Below, in pieces: positions 26,020 to 41,009 of a stretch of 64,000 nt of DNA. The translations under genes and the position numbers were made by a program. Numbering within the stretch: position 1 is the stretch's first letter; every line of letters starts with the position of its first letter. Origin of the DNA: Haliotis cracherodii (Eukaryota); NCBI RefSeq assembly GCF_022045235.1, contig NW_027266343.1:27900001-27964000 (forward strand). The letters run 5' to 3'. Below the pieces are notes generated by a model that saw nothing but the letters and a program-made list of their open reading frames with translations, did not search any database and had not been told where the DNA came from.

Positions 26020-28784
26020 TCACAGGATGTCATAGGTCAGTATCTTCTTGTCGGACTTTATGAAAGCCTGAATGAGCATGGTTCTCAGGATACTGCTCAA
26101 CATCTGGAAACTCATCTTTTCTTTCTTTAAGCAGTCCATTTCTCTGTCCACCATCAAATAAAATGGGGATTTCTTTGCCAGCATAGACGGTGGTCGCATT
26201 CTTTGGTACTTCATAAACATCGAAACAAAGCAACGATCTGGATGCGCATTATTGGGATACACTTTGTCATTCGCATTTTCCCAACTGGAGCTATTGGAAG
26301 ACACCAGTTGTAAATATTCGTTCTTATATTCATCCACTTTTATAACAATGTCTCCCCACTTGAGGGAGGTATGAGAGCTGGTCTGGTTCAGTTTGAACAT
26401 CACAGAGTTCATGAACCACACCGAGTTGGTCAGTGACTCCGCCGAACTACCGCCTAACTGCCCTGTCCGGAACAACTTATCAACATCTCGTCTTGTCAGT
26501 GGGCTGATGGTCAGTGCAGGGTCAGGGTCAGGCTGTTGAAGCTGACGTAGTTGTTGAATTTTGGTCTGCAGCAGCGAACGACAGTTTAGGAACTCTGTAT
26601 CCCTTGTGATGGACACAGGATAGCCATTTTCCCTCAAATACAATTCTAGATACGACTGGATACTTTTCAGTGTACTTACACCAAACTCTTGTCCACGTAG
26701 ATTACGAACAGTAACATAAAATTCAGCCAGGAGTGGATCTAACTTGTCAGGAGGAATCCTAAACATTGGATCATTAACACCCTTCTCCTTGATGAAACTC
26801 TGAAATCGTTTTACTGCAAATCTGACATAATCTTTGAATGAGTCCAGCTTCCTTATCTCTGTGCTGGAGAAAGGGTCAGCATCCCCGCCAGGCACAAAGT
26901 CCTCTTCGTCTTCGTCCTCAGAATCAAGGTCGATGATGATCGGACTGTCCATGTTATCATCAATGTTGTCCTCCTGATTGTTGGTGTCCTCCGAGACTTG
27001 GGAATGAGCAGAGTCCACATCGTCTATTGACGTCACTGCGGAGATGCTGCCGACCTCCAGCATCAGGGAGGAGGAAACTGTGCAGGGCACTTCAACACCT
27101 GCAACAAATAACGCTAAAAACTACTACTCCTGCACAGACTCTAATGTCATACTATAAGTACCACCACTACTTACATAGAAACTGTTTTTTCCAAGATTAT
27201 CAATAATCTATTCACTATGAAGACAGTTAATCTTTTTTAACCATCTAAATCGAGCATGTTACATATATAAAAAAAATCAAATGTTTCATGGAACTGCTGT
27301 GAAGGTTTTGAATAAGGTTAACTTCCTCAAATATAACTCTGGAAATCAGAGTTCTGACAAAAATACAAACAGCACATTGCTCAAAATAAAGATATTTTCA
27401 ATGAAACACAATATTGTTAATATTTCTTTTTACTTTGTAAAATATGAGACAGGCTGATCGGTAAAAGAAACATATGGTTTGTCCAGACTGACTGCCAGAC
27501 TGACCATTGAAAGACCTCACCTGAGTAGGAGGTGGAGGGTTCACTGTGGTCCGTGCTGGTGGAGTGTTGGATTCCTGTGTTGCCATGGTCGTTGGTGTGA
27601 ATCTGTAGGCCAGCTGTCCCTTCATCTCCATCCTCCTCCTCCTTGGCTTCATCCAGCAGCTCTATGTAGGGCTGGCCAGGTGGGATGTCCATCTCCGTCC
27701 CCGCCTTGCGGTGCTGCAGTAGGGCCTGGTCTTCATTTGACTTGGAAACAAGATGACGCAGGCTTGAGACGTTCATCCTCTCTGGCTGTTCCAGGGATGG
27801 TGGGGGTGAAGAATCTGATGATGTCTTTGGTGATTTCTTAGAAGACAGGCCCAATGTCTTTGACTTCATGTAGAGGCCTGTTAGAGACAAAGATGGCTCC
27901 AGAGTTGATGGAGACAAAGTTGAGGCCAGACTTGACTGAATATCTACAACAGGCTGCCCTGTCACAGAAGAAGACTTCGATGAGGCAGATCTTGAGATTT
28001 TCTTTGGGACAAGAGAAAGATCCGGAAATGTGTCCTCACTGTCTTCCCCGCCATAGCTGTTCTCATTTGAACTACCAGATGGCGGACTCTTGGTGGGTGA
28101 ACCAAGTGACTCCACTACACTGCTGACGAAGTCATGAAAGGTTTCCTTGTCTGGAGAATGTGGTGTGCTGGATGAATGTAACTTGGCTGCCGACTCAAGG
28201 AATGAGCTACTTCTGGACTCAATTCCTATACCACCAGAGTCTCTTTGTGTATAGTCTTCTGTCATAGTTGCAACCCTTCCAAGAATGCACCTATTGGCTG
28301 AATCTTCCATTTTTTTATTGATACTTTTAGCTTGACTTTTTCCCGTATTAGTAACTGCAATAGAGGATTTGGCTGATTTTGGTACAGTGGTTGAATTTGA
28401 CTTCCTTCTTTTCGGCTGCGGTGGGGTATCTAGCGCTATAATAACTTCGTCGTCCGAGTCTCTCATTGGTTGACATTGTGTCCTGTTCTCCTTATCCTCT
28501 ATTATATCTGACTTAGTTTTTTCAGAAGAGCTGACCTTTTCCTTTCCTCTCACAGATATGGGCAAGTTCTTGTAAGCTTTTGTACAGTAGCTCTCGCTAA
28601 TGACATTACCGCATTGCTGCAGCAGTTCACTGAGAACATAACGTTCCTTCTTGGCATTGTCAATCTCCACACACACATAGCCACTTACTTCCACAATCTG
28701 GTCAAAGTTTAAGTGTTCTTGGCACAAATTCTGCAGACTTTCTAGGAAGGATGAAAAGAATTTAACTGAGTAATGCTTCTCCAT
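26020..28784 (-). CDS. 780-aa protein: shared unnamed N-terminal domain, Ser-rich linker and Crypton-derived DUF3504/KIAA1958/ZMYM-type C-terminal domain (exons 28784-27521, 27098-26020)
   Basis: Donor cag|gtgagg after 27521 (phase 1) and acceptor tttgttgcag before 27098 fuse the 455-aa and 356-aa ORFs in frame (2343 nt). LDPLLAEFYVTVRNLRGQEFGVSTLKSIQSYLELYL, LTNSVWFMNSVMF..SHTSLKWGDI, RCFV and KSPFYL are typical of DUF3504-type proteins. A SIM-like IIIDLDSEDEDEE is present. A 5' UTR acceptor precedes 28836. Confidence 0.85.
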
Positions 28785-29159
28785 GCTGTCTTGCGGTTAC
28801 TATGGTTACTATGGTTTGCTATGTCAGATGTATCATCTGAAAAGAATAACAATTAAGCATTAATGCATCACTGAAAACATAAATTCTGACACAATAATGA
28901 AATTCTGTTGACACCTTTTCCGCATACCAATCAGTGAACTGTTGTTTGTTCAATTATTTTATTGCCTCTGAACTTCATAGTAAACATATAAACTGTGTGT
29001 TGTTTTTATGTAAGTGCTCTACTCAGTGCTGATAAACGGTGCTATTTGCTGTTTGATTGAATTAAGGTAAGGATATGTATCATTCCACTGGGGATAGGGT
29101 GGGGGGAGTCGCATTGATATTGAGTCGCATTTATGGCTAGGGGTCAGCAGTCGTATTGT

Positions 29160-30215
29160 GGATCCTCTAACCCGTGTTCAAAACGCACAGGATTCAGCAT
29201 CCATATCAACAAACCCCAAAAAGAAACAAAATCCTATAGGCTCCCAAATAATCAATCAATCGTCACAGCCGAATTAATTGGGATAGTAACAGCCCTGCAC
29301 AGCGCTCAAATAAATAGACACCAAAAAACCCTAATCCTTTCAGACTCATTAAGTGGGCTCCAGGCGATAAACACAAAAACACACCCAAAACTAATACTAC
29401 AGATACTTAAAAACTCAAACAATCTACGTAAACTAGGTAAAGACATAGAAATAGTTTGGATACCCGCTCATATTGGAGTGTTTGGCAATGAACAAACAGA
29501 CAAAGCAACCAAATCAGCACTAAAATAAGAAGAAGTAAGCATGAACCTACCAATATGAAAAAACGAAATTAAAAGTATCACAAAGGAGAAAATCTTCCAA
29601 AAGTGACAAAATAACTATCAGAAATCGGACTGCAAACTAAAACACCTGCTACAAAAGCCAGTCAAAAAAAACAAAAATCCATCATAAAACAAAAACAATT
29701 GACAGAGTAATAACCAAACTACAAACAGGCCACACTGAGTTAAACTCCCACCTAGACCAATTTAAAAAACACAAAACCGGTAAATGCCCCCAGTGCAACT
29801 AAAAAGAAACTCCTGAACACGTTATACTATATTGCACACATTACCAGCAACACAGAACAACACTCCAATCCACACTAAACTGCAACAATCAAATGACAAT
29901 AGCAACGCTACTAAACCCCCTAAATGACTTACAAACTTATAAATCACTCAGCATCTATCTAATCAAAACAGGCCTCCTCGGCCACATCTAAAAAACTACA
30001 AGAAACAAGCTGTCAATAAACCTATAAAAACACACAGCCACACAACCTCACAAAAACTCCATTTAGTCCCTCGATCCCCCCATTGGAAATATGGGTGCCT
30101 TCACAAACCAGCTGGGTACCTGCCTCTATACCCGACACATACCTAGGATACCCCCCATGTAGTAGGCTACCCGTCCTTCCCATCAGGCTGTCCACAATAC
30201 TGTCCTTTCTCAGCA
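29160..30215 (+). mobile_element. 5'-truncated I-group LINE remnant (RNase H plus CCHC C-terminus)
   Basis: ORF 29133-29528 carries RNase H motifs TAELIGI, LSDSLS and WIPAHIGVFGNEQTDKATK. A disrupted TGHTELNSHL..CPQCN..ETPEHVILYC knuckle follows, with stops and frameshifts. Confidence 0.85.
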
Positions 30216-39671: not shown

Positions 39672-40222
39672 AGTCACTACAAAGAGATCTTTATCCTTGA
39701 GACACAGCAAAAGGTTATTTCCTTGAACAACGGGAAACCCTGATGTTTACTGAAACCTACGTTATCAACTCACCACAAAATAATAGTTATAACCTTTATT
39801 CCCGCAAAACAACGTCACCAGAAAGTCTATAAACTATACATTATATAATCAAAAGAAATAGAGGAAAATGCACCAACAGGAACAACGGGAAACCCAGACA
39901 AGCTGACTTTGTTCGAAAAATATAGTTTATTGATTATCACCAATGTTTTGGTTAACAACAATTATGTATAAGGTACCGGTACTATATTTGCCGTTCCACA
40001 AGGACTGGCAGCCACATGATTTACTGTCCAAAGCCTAACACTACTGGTAAAAAAACCTTGTAAATACCGGTAAACGGGAACGCTGTGTATGTACAATATT
40101 GAAAGTGTTTATAGAATGCATTCTTACCCATATTATAAATATGCGAGGTAAAGATGCAGAAATAAAATTTGATTTCTAATTGCAGTAACAATAAGTGCTT
40201 CCTCTGCTGAACAATTTTCAAG

Positions 40223-41009
40223 ATGGAGAAACAGTATTCAGTTGAGTTCTTTATGAACTTTGTGGAAAACATTCAGAATCTATGTCACAACTTTCTTGAG
40301 TTCAATCAGAATGTGGAGGTGAGCGGCTATGTCTGTGTGGACATCGACAACATGAAGAAGGAGAGGTATGTTCTCAGTGAGATAGTCCAAATGGGAGGCA
40401 ACTCCATCAGCGAGAGCTACTGTACTAAAGTCTTCAAAACCACTCCCACAGGCACTGTGCAGAGGAGTGGATTCCGGGACATCACAAACGCTCGAGTCCC
40501 CAGTACAGCAACAAGTTCGGGGGAAGTGAATGTGCCAGGACATTCGTATTCATCACAAAGGATGAGGACTGGTCATCAGAGGAAAAGTGAAAGCTCCCAC
40601 ACATTATCTTTGAACATGGCTGTTTCACCAAGGTCACAAACAAAGACAGCTATTGACCAAACTTGTAGTGTCTTTCAAGGTCATAATGCCAGTTCAAACA
40701 GTAATAGTAGTTTTCTTAACCCCAGTGTGACAGGCATTCAAGGACGTGAGTCTGGCTCAGGGGATTCCCAAAATCGGACGAAGTCAAGACAGTTGACTCC
40801 AAAAGTATGTAGACCAGCAACAGTGCCTAACAGTTCTGTGCTTAAAAGACGGTGTGAACCTTCCCCCCTGTCAGACAGCGGTGATGATGCGGATGTGATA
40901 GTTGTGAAGCAAGAGCCGTGTGACGAGGAGCGGGAGGAGCACGGCGATCAGCCTCCTGTCAAGCGCCGGAGCGAGACGTTCCGTCTACCTTCATCACTAA
41001 CAGGAGGAG
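40223..41009 (+). CDS. Common first coding exon (A) of a zinc-finger gene: shared unnamed N-terminal domain plus Ser-rich linker
   Basis: Acceptor ttctaattgcag before 40186, ATG at 40223, donor gag|gtatgt after 41009 (787 nt, phase 1). The first ~73 aa align without gaps to the N-terminus of the minus-strand gene. A SUMO consensus VKQE is present. Confidence 0.85.

What the first reader, a model, noticed from the sequence alone, without database searches (positions are those of the whole stretch)
28560..40445. Head-to-head paralogues share an unnamed ~73-aa N-terminal domain fused to unrelated nuclear effector domains
Seen in sequence: MEKHYSVKFFSSFLESLQNLCQEHLNFDQIVEVSGYVCVEIDNAKKERYVLSELLQQCGNVISESYCTKAYK (minus, ATG 28784) aligns without gaps to MEKQYSVEFFMNFVENIQNLCHNFLEFNQNVEVSGYVCVDIDNMKKERYVLSEIVQMGGNSISESYCTKVFK (plus, ATG 40223). 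Similarity ends abruptly after that. Both genes have the ATG shortly after an acceptor, a long Ser-rich linker and a phase-1 donor. One ends in a Crypton-derived domain and the other in C2H2 fingers. I do not recognise the domain as BTB, SCAN, KRAB or ZAD. Inference: a lineage-specific dimerisation or co-repressor module (a helix followed by beta strands) playing the role those domains play elsewhere. It could let the divergently transcribed products heterodimerise.
Basis: partly seen in the sequence, partly recalled or inferred. Interest (0 to 1): 0.82.

Follow-up and report, generated by a model that had tools for sequence, protein, structure and literature searches.

The report
Unnamed mollusc transcription-factor N-terminal domain
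Two neighbouring abalone genes share a 73-residue protein module that heads a whole mollusc family of DNA-binding nuclear proteins, sits where BTB, KRAB or ZAD domains sit in other animals, and is named by no database searched here.

Summary
Window 28566-28784 (-) and 40223-40441 (+) encode N-terminal segments that are 68% identical over 75 residues without gaps (E 2e-34). One gene ends in DUF3504, the other in C2H2 fingers.

It is not just a pair. This abalone genome has at least 24 copies, and a profile search found 286 relatives. Every hit whose source organism could be read is a mollusc: gastropods of all major groups and a few bivalves.

The segment gave no significant hit in Pfam, in PDB sequences or in two PDB fold searches. 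With a 107-sequence alignment AlphaFold2 predicts one helix followed by four strands (pLDDT 87).

It lies at the N-terminus in 143 of the 150 listed hits. It is followed by a disordered linker and by DUF3504, C2H2, HTH_psq, CENP-B/Tc5 HTH, piggyBac zinc-finger or FLYWCH domains.

The plus-strand gene is a lola-like locus: one constant 5' exon and at least three alternative 3' ends. Aplysia, Physella and Biomphalaria loci have 25 or more such isoforms.

Purifying selection is strong, and in a tandem cluster the domain alone evolves in concert.

Oligomerisation or cofactor recruitment is inferred from architecture only; heterodimerisation was not tested.

The parts
28566..28784 (-). N-terminal domain (73 codons) of the minus-strand gene, the orthologue of H. 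rufescens LOC124111701
   Evidence: AF2 model
27521..28836 (-). Minus gene, first coding exon. AG acceptor at 28838-28837, ATG at 28784, phase-1 donor after 27521. Holds the domain, a Ser-rich linker and an acid-flanked aliphatic motif at residue 115.
   Evidence: The acceptor was read from sequence only; no RNA was laid here.
26020..27098 (-). Minus gene, last coding exon, stop codon included. DUF3504 (Crypton-derived) lies at about 26074-26487. A second acid-flanked aliphatic motif lies near its start.
40223..40441 (+). N-terminal domain (73 codons) of the plus-strand gene, the orthologue of H. rufescens LOC124111699
40186..41009 (+). Plus gene, constant exon. Acceptor AG at 40184-40185, ATG at 40223, phase-1 donor after 41009. 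Holds the domain, the linker and an acid-flanked aliphatic motif at residue 225.
   Evidence: Transcript contigs of 4 runs end at 40188 and 41009 and run on into other sequence.
43435..43994 (+). Plus gene, alternative 3'-terminal exon A with C2H2 fingers (the H. asinina isoform X3 type). The acceptor at 43433-43434 is inferred.
   Evidence: transcript contigs on 43619-43954
59500..59749 (+). Plus gene, internal exon shared by isoform types X1 and X2. It has a phase-1 acceptor and a phase-2 donor.
60469..61021 (+). Plus gene, alternative 3'-terminal exon B with a C2H2 array (isoform X1 type). A third ending lies 16-17 kb beyond the window, at C80:27980135-27981344. It has no Pfam hit above threshold (BEN E 0.18).

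Best explanation
The 73-residue segment is an undescribed protein domain, found so far only in molluscs, that acts as the constant N-terminal module of a family of nuclear, mostly DNA-binding proteins.

**Shown.**
- It is an autonomous, strongly constrained unit at the very N-terminus.
- It is predicted to fold as one helix packed on a four-stranded antiparallel sheet.
- A disordered Ser-rich linker follows, often carrying an acid-flanked aliphatic motif of SUMO-interaction-motif type.
- The C-terminal domain is interchangeable: DUF3504, C2H2, HTH_psq, CENP-B/Tc5 HTH, piggyBac zinc finger or FLYWCH.
- In gastropods it is encoded in a constant 5' exon ending in a phase-1 donor, which is joined to alternative 3'-terminal exons. 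This abalone gene has at least 3 endings. Aplysia, Physella and Biomphalaria loci have 25 or more.

**Inferred.**
- The domain is net acidic and always accompanies a DNA-binding domain. Most likely it does not bind DNA itself but mediates protein-protein contacts.
- These contacts would be self- and cross-association between family members, and/or recruitment of a chromatin cofactor.
- It would thus play the role that TTK-type BTB, ZAD, SCAN or KRAB domains play in other lineages.
- The two genes in this window are the DUF3504 form and the only zinc-finger form found in abalone.
For: - **Pair identity:** 68% over 75 residues, E 2e-34.
- **Copy number:** 24 genomic copies, 16 of them (15 strong matches and one weak) in the cluster at C80:2.59-2.92 Mb.
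- **Wider family:** 286 profile hits among 1.84 billion representatives, 55 of them at E<=1e-10. In 143 of the 150 listed, the match starts within the first 30 residues.
- **Taxa:** Haliotis, Gigantopelta, Patella, Lottia, Batillaria, Nucella, Littorina, Pomacea, Lymnaea, Aplysia, Plakobranchus, Physella, Biomphalaria, Elysia and others, plus the bivalves Solemya, Sinanodonta and Potamilus.
- **Partner domains:**. None of the 120 listed heterobranch proteins carries BTB (PF00651), although many are named 'ZBTB-like'.
- **Alternative endings in the window:**
- **Gigantopelta:** one locus with C2H2, psq or CENP-B endings and another with 14 isoforms.
- **Expression and splicing of the constant exon:**
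- **Fold:** pLDDT 86.9, pTM 0.71, all five models at or above 82.
- **Selection:** window pair pN 0.19 against pS 0.88. The median pN/pS over 190 paralogue pairs is 0.27, and omega is 0.04-0.10 in most of the least-diverged pairs (up to 0.39 in those involving L013 or L016).
- **Orthologue conservation:** residues 1-73 are identical to H. asinina, while the exon as a whole is 79% identical.
- **Concerted evolution confined to the domain:** nucleotide identity is 97-99% inside it and about 30% on both flanks. The DUF3504 blocks of the same gene pairs have pS 0.75-0.87. This fits a surface that must stay mutually compatible.
Against: - No direct evidence of self-association or of any partner.
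The fold therefore rests on one deep-alignment prediction.
- Only the best 150 of the 286 hits could be inspected, and only some could be assigned to an organism. 'Mollusc-specific' is therefore provisional.
- Low synonymous divergence in the cluster could also reflect a constraint at nucleotide level.
Confidence: 0.6

Rival explanations
1. The domain is chiefly an effector domain of KRAB type. It recruits one conserved co-repressor or chromatin enzyme and does not make family members associate with each other.
For: It has the same architecture as KRAB-ZNF and ZAD-ZNF proteins. Invariant acidic and polar positions (D42, E53, S63, S65) across distant molluscs could form a docking site. The linker motif of SUMO-interaction type points to chromatin-repression machinery.
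Against: No partner is known. Concerted evolution limited to the domain within a tandem cluster is not needed if all copies merely keep binding one conserved cofactor under ordinary purifying selection. This rival is not exclusive of the best explanation.
Confidence: 0.25
2. The domain is a nucleic-acid-binding or chromatin-reading domain that adds specificity to the C-terminal DNA-binding domain.
For: It is always found in nuclear-type proteins. Small alpha+beta domains can bind DNA or histone tails. Fold searches exclude nothing.
Against: The window copies are net acidic (about 10 D/E against 7 K/R, read). The domain always comes with a separate DNA-binding domain, and with very different ones. 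It shows no similarity to any known DNA-binding fold.
Confidence: 0.08
3. The copies are mobile Crypton-type elements or their recent debris, and the segment is simply the N-terminus of a transposon protein.
For: The commonest partner in abalone, DUF3504, derives from the Crypton tyrosine recombinase (PMC3212892). Several other partners are transposase-derived DNA-binding domains, such as zf-Tnp_2, Tc5 and CENP-B HTH. The genes are multicopy and clustered.
Against: - Flanks of the paralogues are unalignable (about 30% identity), and no shared termini were seen.
- DUF3504 blocks are 40-54% identical with saturated pS, so the duplications are old.
- Orthologues are annotated in four Haliotis species and in bivalves.
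- The genes are spliced and expressed.
- No catalytic transposase or integrase domain occurs in any member scanned.
- DUF3504 by definition lacks most of the catalytic tetrad (PMC3212892). This was not re-tested here.
Confidence: 0.04
4. It is a highly diverged member of an already named domain family (BTB, ZAD, SCAN or another) that the tools used here cannot recognise.
For: NCBI names many members 'zinc finger and BTB domain-containing protein ...-like'. Only hmmscan against Pfam was available, not HHpred profile-profile comparison.
Against: - No Pfam family matches the N-terminal segment in about 150 members scanned.
- No PDB sequence is hit even at E 10.
- The predicted fold of one helix plus four strands in 73 residues is unlike BTB, SCAN or KRAB.
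- There is only one near-invariant Cys, so a ZAD-type zinc site is impossible.
- BTB chains did not appear in either fold search.
- The 'ZBTB' names evidently come from the zinc fingers.
Confidence: 0.04

Closest known systems
TTK-type BTB domain proteins of arthropods (lola, mod(mdg4), tramtrack, pipsqueak, GAF); PMC11426971
   Same: - It is a lineage-restricted N-terminal module followed by a linker and by C2H2, psq-type HTH or FLYWCH domains.
- Loci produce many isoforms that share the N-terminal exon and differ in the DNA-binding end. Lola has 20 and mod(mdg4) about 30. Here Aplysia has at least 27 listed isoforms, Physella and Biomphalaria 25 or more, and this abalone gene 3.
- The same three partner classes recur.
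   Different: - It is not homologous: there is no BTB Pfam hit, the predicted fold is different, and it is about 73 rather than about 120 residues.
- The paper reports finding no TTK motif in Mollusca.
- Hexamer or dimer formation, shown for TTK-BTB, is untested here.
- Whether joining is by cis- or trans-splicing is unknown.
ZAD (insects), SCAN and KRAB (vertebrates) N-terminal domains of C2H2 proteins
   Same: Each is a lineage-specific N-terminal module of expanded zinc-finger families that mediates dimerisation (ZAD, SCAN) or co-repressor recruitment (KRAB). This is stated from general knowledge.
   Different: - There is no sequence or fold similarity.
- ZAD needs four zinc-binding Cys, and only one Cys is near-invariant here.
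- SCAN and KRAB are helical, whereas this domain is alpha+beta.
- These three domains partner almost only with C2H2 fingers. This domain partners with many kinds of DNA-binding domain and with DUF3504.
Vertebrate DUF3504 proteins that also carry an oligomerisation domain: QRICH1 (CARD + DUF3504) and KCTD1 isoform b (DUF3504 + BTB); PMC3212892, PMC10422060
   Same: A Crypton-derived DUF3504 domain is combined with a separate small interaction domain in a nuclear regulator. The minus-strand gene and most abalone paralogues have exactly this layout.
   Different: The interaction domain here is neither CARD nor BTB. It is N-terminal, and it is shared with zinc-finger genes. NCBI's 'QRICH1-like' and 'ZMYM3-like' names rest on DUF3504 only.
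Host-transposase fusion genes formed by exon capture (bioRxiv 10.1101/2020.05.07.082677)
   Same: A host N-terminal effector exon with a splice donor is joined to transposase-derived DNA-binding domains. Here those are the piggyBac zinc finger, Tc5/CENP-B HTH, psq and Crypton-derived DUF3504.
   Different: That mechanism was described for vertebrates, with KRAB, SCAN and BTB as host parts. Here the host part is a new domain in molluscs. Capture events themselves were not reconstructed.

Membership tests
BTB/POZ (PF00651) | Significant match to the BTB profile | tested here: not met
   There was no BTB hit in the two window proteins or in the 96 and 51 family members scanned. None of the 120 listed heterobranch proteins carries PF00651.
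BTB/POZ (PF00651) | BTB fold: a core of about 95-120 residues, mostly helical with a three-stranded sheet | tested here: not met
ZAD (zf-AD) | Four conserved cysteines that coordinate zinc | tested here: not met
   Across 107 sequences only C21 is near-invariant. There is no Pfam hit.
SCAN / KRAB | Profile match; helical domain | tested here: not met
   There are no Pfam hits. The predicted structure is mainly beta after one helix.
DUF3504 (PF12012, Crypton-derived), C-terminus of the minus gene | Profile match above the gathering score | tested here: met
   52.1 bits against a cut-off of 29.7 for window:26020-27090:-. P0031 gives 49.7 bits.
DUF3504 (PF12012, Crypton-derived), C-terminus of the minus gene | Loss of the recombinase catalytic tetrad R-H-R-Y (PMC3212892) | not tested
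   No alignment to active Crypton recombinases was made.
C2H2 zinc finger, C-termini of the plus gene | Profile match above the gathering score | tested here: met
   zf-C2H2_4 gives 31.2 bits against a cut-off of 27 for exon A. P0024 gives 41 and 34 bits for exon B.
lola / mod(mdg4)-type multi-isoform locus | One constant 5' part encoding the N-terminal domain, joined to alternative 3'-terminal exons that encode different DNA-binding domains | tested here: met
   Annotated isoforms map to 40223-41009 plus 43435-43994, or plus 59500-59749 with 60469-61021, or plus exons beyond the window. The constant exon is spliced at both ends in RNA contigs. Aplysia, Physella and Biomphalaria loci have 25 or more isoforms. 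Direct junction reads to each ending were not obtained.
lola / mod(mdg4)-type multi-isoform locus | Trans-splicing between separate transcripts | not testable with these tools
   All known endings lie downstream on the same strand, so ordinary cis-splicing suffices.
SUMO-interaction motif (linker) | Aliphatic core of [VI][VILM]x[VIL] or [VI]x[VI][VIL] type flanked by acidic residues (consensus recalled from the literature) | tested here: met
   The motif occurs in 102 of 198 family proteins against 6.8 expected from shuffled tails. The window genes carry it at residue 115 and at exon-2 residue 56 (minus gene) and at residue 225 (plus gene).
SUMO-interaction motif (linker) | Binding to SUMO | not testable with these tools
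   This needs a binding assay.

The most novel reading that the evidence does not exclude
Molluscs evolved their own counterpart of the arthropod TTK-BTB system, not homologous to it. A new small alpha+beta fold would self- and cross-associate, so that dozens of isoforms and paralogues with different DNA-binding ends form combinatorial complexes. Gene conversion confined to the domain would keep tandem paralogues mutually compatible. The system would have started on a Crypton-derived DUF3504 gene (the form shared with bivalves) and later captured zinc-finger and transposase-derived DNA-binding exons.
Probability: 0.35. Interest if true: 0.82.

Novelty: new variant of a known kind. Interest (0 to 1): 0.72.

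Why it matters
Lineage-specific N-terminal modules organise the largest transcription-factor families of vertebrates (KRAB, SCAN) and arthropods (ZAD, TTK-type BTB). No equivalent has been described for molluscs.

Here a conserved, unnamed domain heads a mollusc family that includes loci with 25 or more isoforms differing only in their DNA-binding end. Many of these proteins are currently mislabelled 'ZBTB-like' in public annotation.

The finding matters for three reasons:
- It offers an independent case of convergent evolution of transcription-factor architecture.
- It gives a handle on gene regulation in abalone, Aplysia, Biomphalaria and Lymnaea.
- It gives a clean example of concerted evolution restricted to one domain.

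It also corrects how these genes should be annotated.

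Tried and rejected
- **Pfam on the segment:** only DUF6272 at E 0.058, well below its cut-off, treated as noise.
- **PDB sequence search** with the 20-sequence profile at E up to 10: nothing.
- **ESM Atlas** with an abalone copy and a distant copy: no usable hit.
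- **First AlphaFold2 run** with 20 close paralogues: pLDDT 72 and two helices, superseded by the 107-sequence run.
- **Foldseek against PDB:** best hits are RAD52, TFIIA and NAC at E>5e-3 and TM<0.4. These were not interpreted.
- **BEN domain for the third C-terminal ending:** E 0.18, below threshold, left open.
- **Domain tree:** 73 columns, mostly unresolved. It was used only to say that the window pair are not sisters and that the Gigantopelta zinc-finger copies form their own clade.
- **A first, stricter motif pattern:** 37 observed against 8.6 expected. It missed obvious cases and was replaced.
- **PD-(D/E)xK nuclease or GIY-YIG reading** of the invariant D42 and E53: rejected by eye, because the required K and the second helix are missing.
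- **Literature searches** for a description of this domain or of lola-like mollusc loci: nothing relevant.
- **Spliced models:** Exons were handled one by one, and database proteins were used for the full-length forms.

Full report
**1. The observation**

The first-exon products align over residues 1-75 with 51 identities and no gaps (E 2e-34). No other significant alignment exists between them.

The minus gene continues into an exon with DUF3504. The plus gene continues into exons with C2H2 fingers.

- AG acceptors lie 52 nt and 37 nt upstream of the two ATGs.
- Phase-1 donors follow bases 27521 and 41009.

For the plus gene, transcript contigs from four runs of two organisms align from 40188 to 41009 and then continue into sequence that is not in the 6-kb stretch laid. 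This exon is therefore expressed and spliced on both sides. Contigs also lie on the first alternative zinc-finger exon.

Exons were read one at a time and compared with annotated abalone proteins.

**2. A family, not a pair**

Searching the window's own genome gave 24 matches at E<1e-3. The genome is 1.18 Gb.

Sixteen of the matches (15 strong and one weak) lie in a cluster at C80:2.59-2.92 Mb. A further one lies about 1 kb before the window start.

Most are single long reading frames made of the domain, a non-conserved linker, an acidic stretch and DUF3504.

The word search found the domain in H. rufescens, H. rubra, H. asinina, H. cracherodii and the vent snail Gigantopelta.

A profile of 20 copies was searched against 1.84 billion representative proteins. 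This search was justified because the claim rests on whether relatives exist. It gave 286 hits at E<=1e-3 and 55 at E<=1e-10. In 143 of the 150 listed hits the match begins within the first 30 residues.

Look-ups assign the hits to these groups:
- Patellogastropods: Patella, Lottia.
- Caenogastropods: Batillaria, Nucella, Littorina, Pomacea.
- Heterobranchs: Lymnaea, Aplysia, Plakobranchus, Elysia, Physella, Biomphalaria, Bulinus, Candidula, Bradybaena.
- Bivalves: Solemya, Sinanodonta, Potamilus.

No non-mollusc was seen.

**3. It is not a named domain**

- Pfam (2025 copy) has no family on this segment in the window proteins or in about 150 members.
- A profile search of all PDB sequences found nothing even at E 10.
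- With a 107-sequence alignment (checked column by column), AlphaFold2 gives pLDDT 86.9 and pTM 0.71. All five models are at or above 82.
- The predicted elements are a helix at 7-24 and strands at 30-41, 45-56, 61-63 and 66-72.
- Foldseek against the PDB gives nothing at E<=1e-3.

BTB, SCAN, KRAB and ZAD are thus excluded as far as these tools can tell. ZAD is also excluded because only one cysteine is conserved. The fold is a simple helix-on-sheet arrangement with no informative neighbour.

**4. What it is attached to**

- In abalone nearly all copies carry DUF3504.
- The only zinc-finger gene with this domain found in Haliotis is the plus-strand gene of this window. All the C2H2-carrying Haliotis proteins listed share its N-terminal exon (checked directly for three of the four; the fourth is named as the same kind of isoform).
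- Elsewhere the partners are C2H2 (35 of 147 scanned), DUF3504, HTH_psq, CENP-B_N with HTH_Tnp_Tc5, the piggyBac-type zinc finger zf-Tnp_2, FLYWCH and other HTH domains.
- No member has a catalytic transposase domain.
- The bivalve members are all of the DUF3504 form, so this is probably the older architecture.

**5. Locus architecture**

Annotated isoforms of the abalone orthologue map as follows:
- The constant exon is 40223-41009.
- Ending A is 43435-43994 (C2H2).
- Ending B is 59500-59749 followed by 60469-61021 (C2H2).
- The third ending is 59500-59749 followed by exons 16-17 kb beyond the window. It has no Pfam hit above threshold (BEN E 0.18).

In Gigantopelta one locus gives C2H2, psq or CENP-B-type endings, and another has 14 isoforms.

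In heterobranchs single loci carry many isoforms with the same N-terminal domain and different fingers:
- Aplysia LOC101862600: isoforms up to X28.
- Physella LOC131937624: up to X25.
- Biomphalaria LOC106060397: up to X25.

NCBI names these isoforms 'zinc finger and BTB domain-containing protein', 'myoneurin' or 'BCL6 homolog'. None of the 120 listed carries a BTB domain.

This is the layout known from Drosophila lola and mod(mdg4), whose TTK-type BTB domain was reported to be absent from molluscs (PMC11426971).

**6. Selection**

- For the window pair, pN is 0.19 and pS is 0.88 (saturated). The duplication is old and the domain is constrained.
- Over 190 paralogue pairs the median pN/pS is 0.27. 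Most of the least-diverged pairs give omega 0.04-0.10; those involving L013 or L016 reach 0.27-0.39.
- Against H. asinina, residues 1-73 of the plus gene are identical, while the whole exon is 79% identical.

In the tandem cluster the domain behaves differently from the rest of the gene:
- Five paralogues are 97-99% identical in nucleotides from about +33 to +193.
- Their identity falls to about 30% immediately upstream of the ATG and beyond about +220.
- Their DUF3504 blocks are 40-54% identical, with pS 0.75-0.87.

This is concerted evolution, most simply gene conversion, confined to the domain.

**7. A second shared element**

Linkers carry an acid-flanked aliphatic core in 102 of 198 family proteins, against 6.8 expected from shuffled tails. 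Both window genes have it.

It fits the consensus of SUMO-interaction motifs as I recall it. In the plus gene it is followed by a psi-K-x-E site. That ZMYM2, another DUF3504 protein, binds SUMO through such motifs is from memory and was not checked here.

**8. How it most likely works**

*Shown.* The segment is a constrained, autonomous N-terminal domain. It has a modular relation to DNA-binding domains, a constant-exon/alternative-end gene structure, and it is expressed.

*Inferred.*
- The domain is acidic, always accompanies a DNA-binding domain of varying kind, and occupies the position of BTB, ZAD, SCAN and KRAB. It most likely mediates protein-protein contacts.
- Both faces of the two long predicted strands carry conserved hydrophobic residues, so one sheet face may be an interface. 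This was read from the sequence pattern, not measured on the model.
- Homogenisation of the domain among tandem paralogues fits a surface that must remain mutually compatible.
- Self-association and recruitment of a cofactor cannot be told apart here, and both may hold.
The two copies are not each other's closest relatives (poorly resolved).

**9. Rivals**

- A pure cofactor-recruiting domain.
- A nucleic-acid or chromatin reader. This is unlikely on charge and context.
- Mobile Crypton copies. Against this: unalignable flanks, old divergence, orthologues in several species, splicing, and no catalytic domains.
- A diverged known domain. There is no support for this, but HHpred was not available.

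**10. Novelty**

Five literature searches found no description of the domain or of lola-like mollusc loci.

The kind of thing is known: a lineage-specific N-terminal module of transcription factors. This one is not homologous to any of the known modules and belongs to another phylum. I therefore rate it a new variant of a known kind.

**11. Limits**

- Only one deep-alignment model supports the fold.
- No multimer prediction was possible.
- RNA was laid only on 38000-43999, and the runs are contigs guessed to be RNA. Their stopping exactly at both exon borders supports that guess.

Noticed in passing
L005, L006, L007, L009, L012 (G000:C80:2.62-2.93 Mb), nt +1 to about +215 of each gene: Concerted evolution is confined to the domain. 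The domain-coding stretch is 97-99% identical in nucleotides between tandem paralogues (pS 0.08-0.25). Both flanks are unalignable, and the DUF3504 blocks of the same pairs have pS 0.75-0.87.
   Followed up: partly
window 28440-28472 (-), 26900-26935 (-), 40880-40915 (+); also 102 of 198 family proteins: An acid-flanked aliphatic motif of SUMO-interaction type sits in the linkers. It is about 15-fold enriched over shuffled tails. In the plus gene it is followed by a psi-K-x-E site.
   Followed up: partly
window 51057-56615 (+): An uninterrupted 1852-codon gag-pol-type reading frame (protease, reverse transcriptase, RNase H, integrase by eye) of an LTR retrotransposon lies inside the long intron of the plus-strand gene. 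It was observed only and not analysed.
   Followed up: no
window 29133-29528 (+): An RNase H-like reading frame of a retroelement fragment lies in the 11.4 kb between the two divergent genes.
   Followed up: no
window 46140-47704 and 49025-50402: Two long tandem-repeat blocks are open in several frames and AT- or C-skewed. Both lie in the intron of the plus gene.
   Followed up: no
window 38200-38600, 39000-39800, 41200-41400: RNA-type contigs pile up thousands deep at 90-95% identity with many loose ends. This marks dispersed repeats upstream of and just after the constant exon.
   Followed up: no
G000:C80:27898883-27899098 (-), about 1 kb before the window start: A third family member (the orthologue of H. 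rufescens LOC124111704, the domain plus DUF3504) lies on the far side of the dynein-tip genes. The local group therefore has three members.
   Followed up: partly
Proteins P0218-P0307 (Aplysia, Physella, Biomphalaria): Public annotation names dozens of isoforms 'zinc finger and BTB domain-containing protein', 'myoneurin' or 'BCL6 homolog', although none has a BTB domain on record. They start with the domain described here.
   Followed up: partly
window 59500-59749: The internal exon of the plus gene overlaps the stretch that another first-stage note (s1-829811) reads as a transposon insertion rescued by an in-phase acceptor. Here the exon matches the annotated abalone isoforms at 94%.
   Followed up: no
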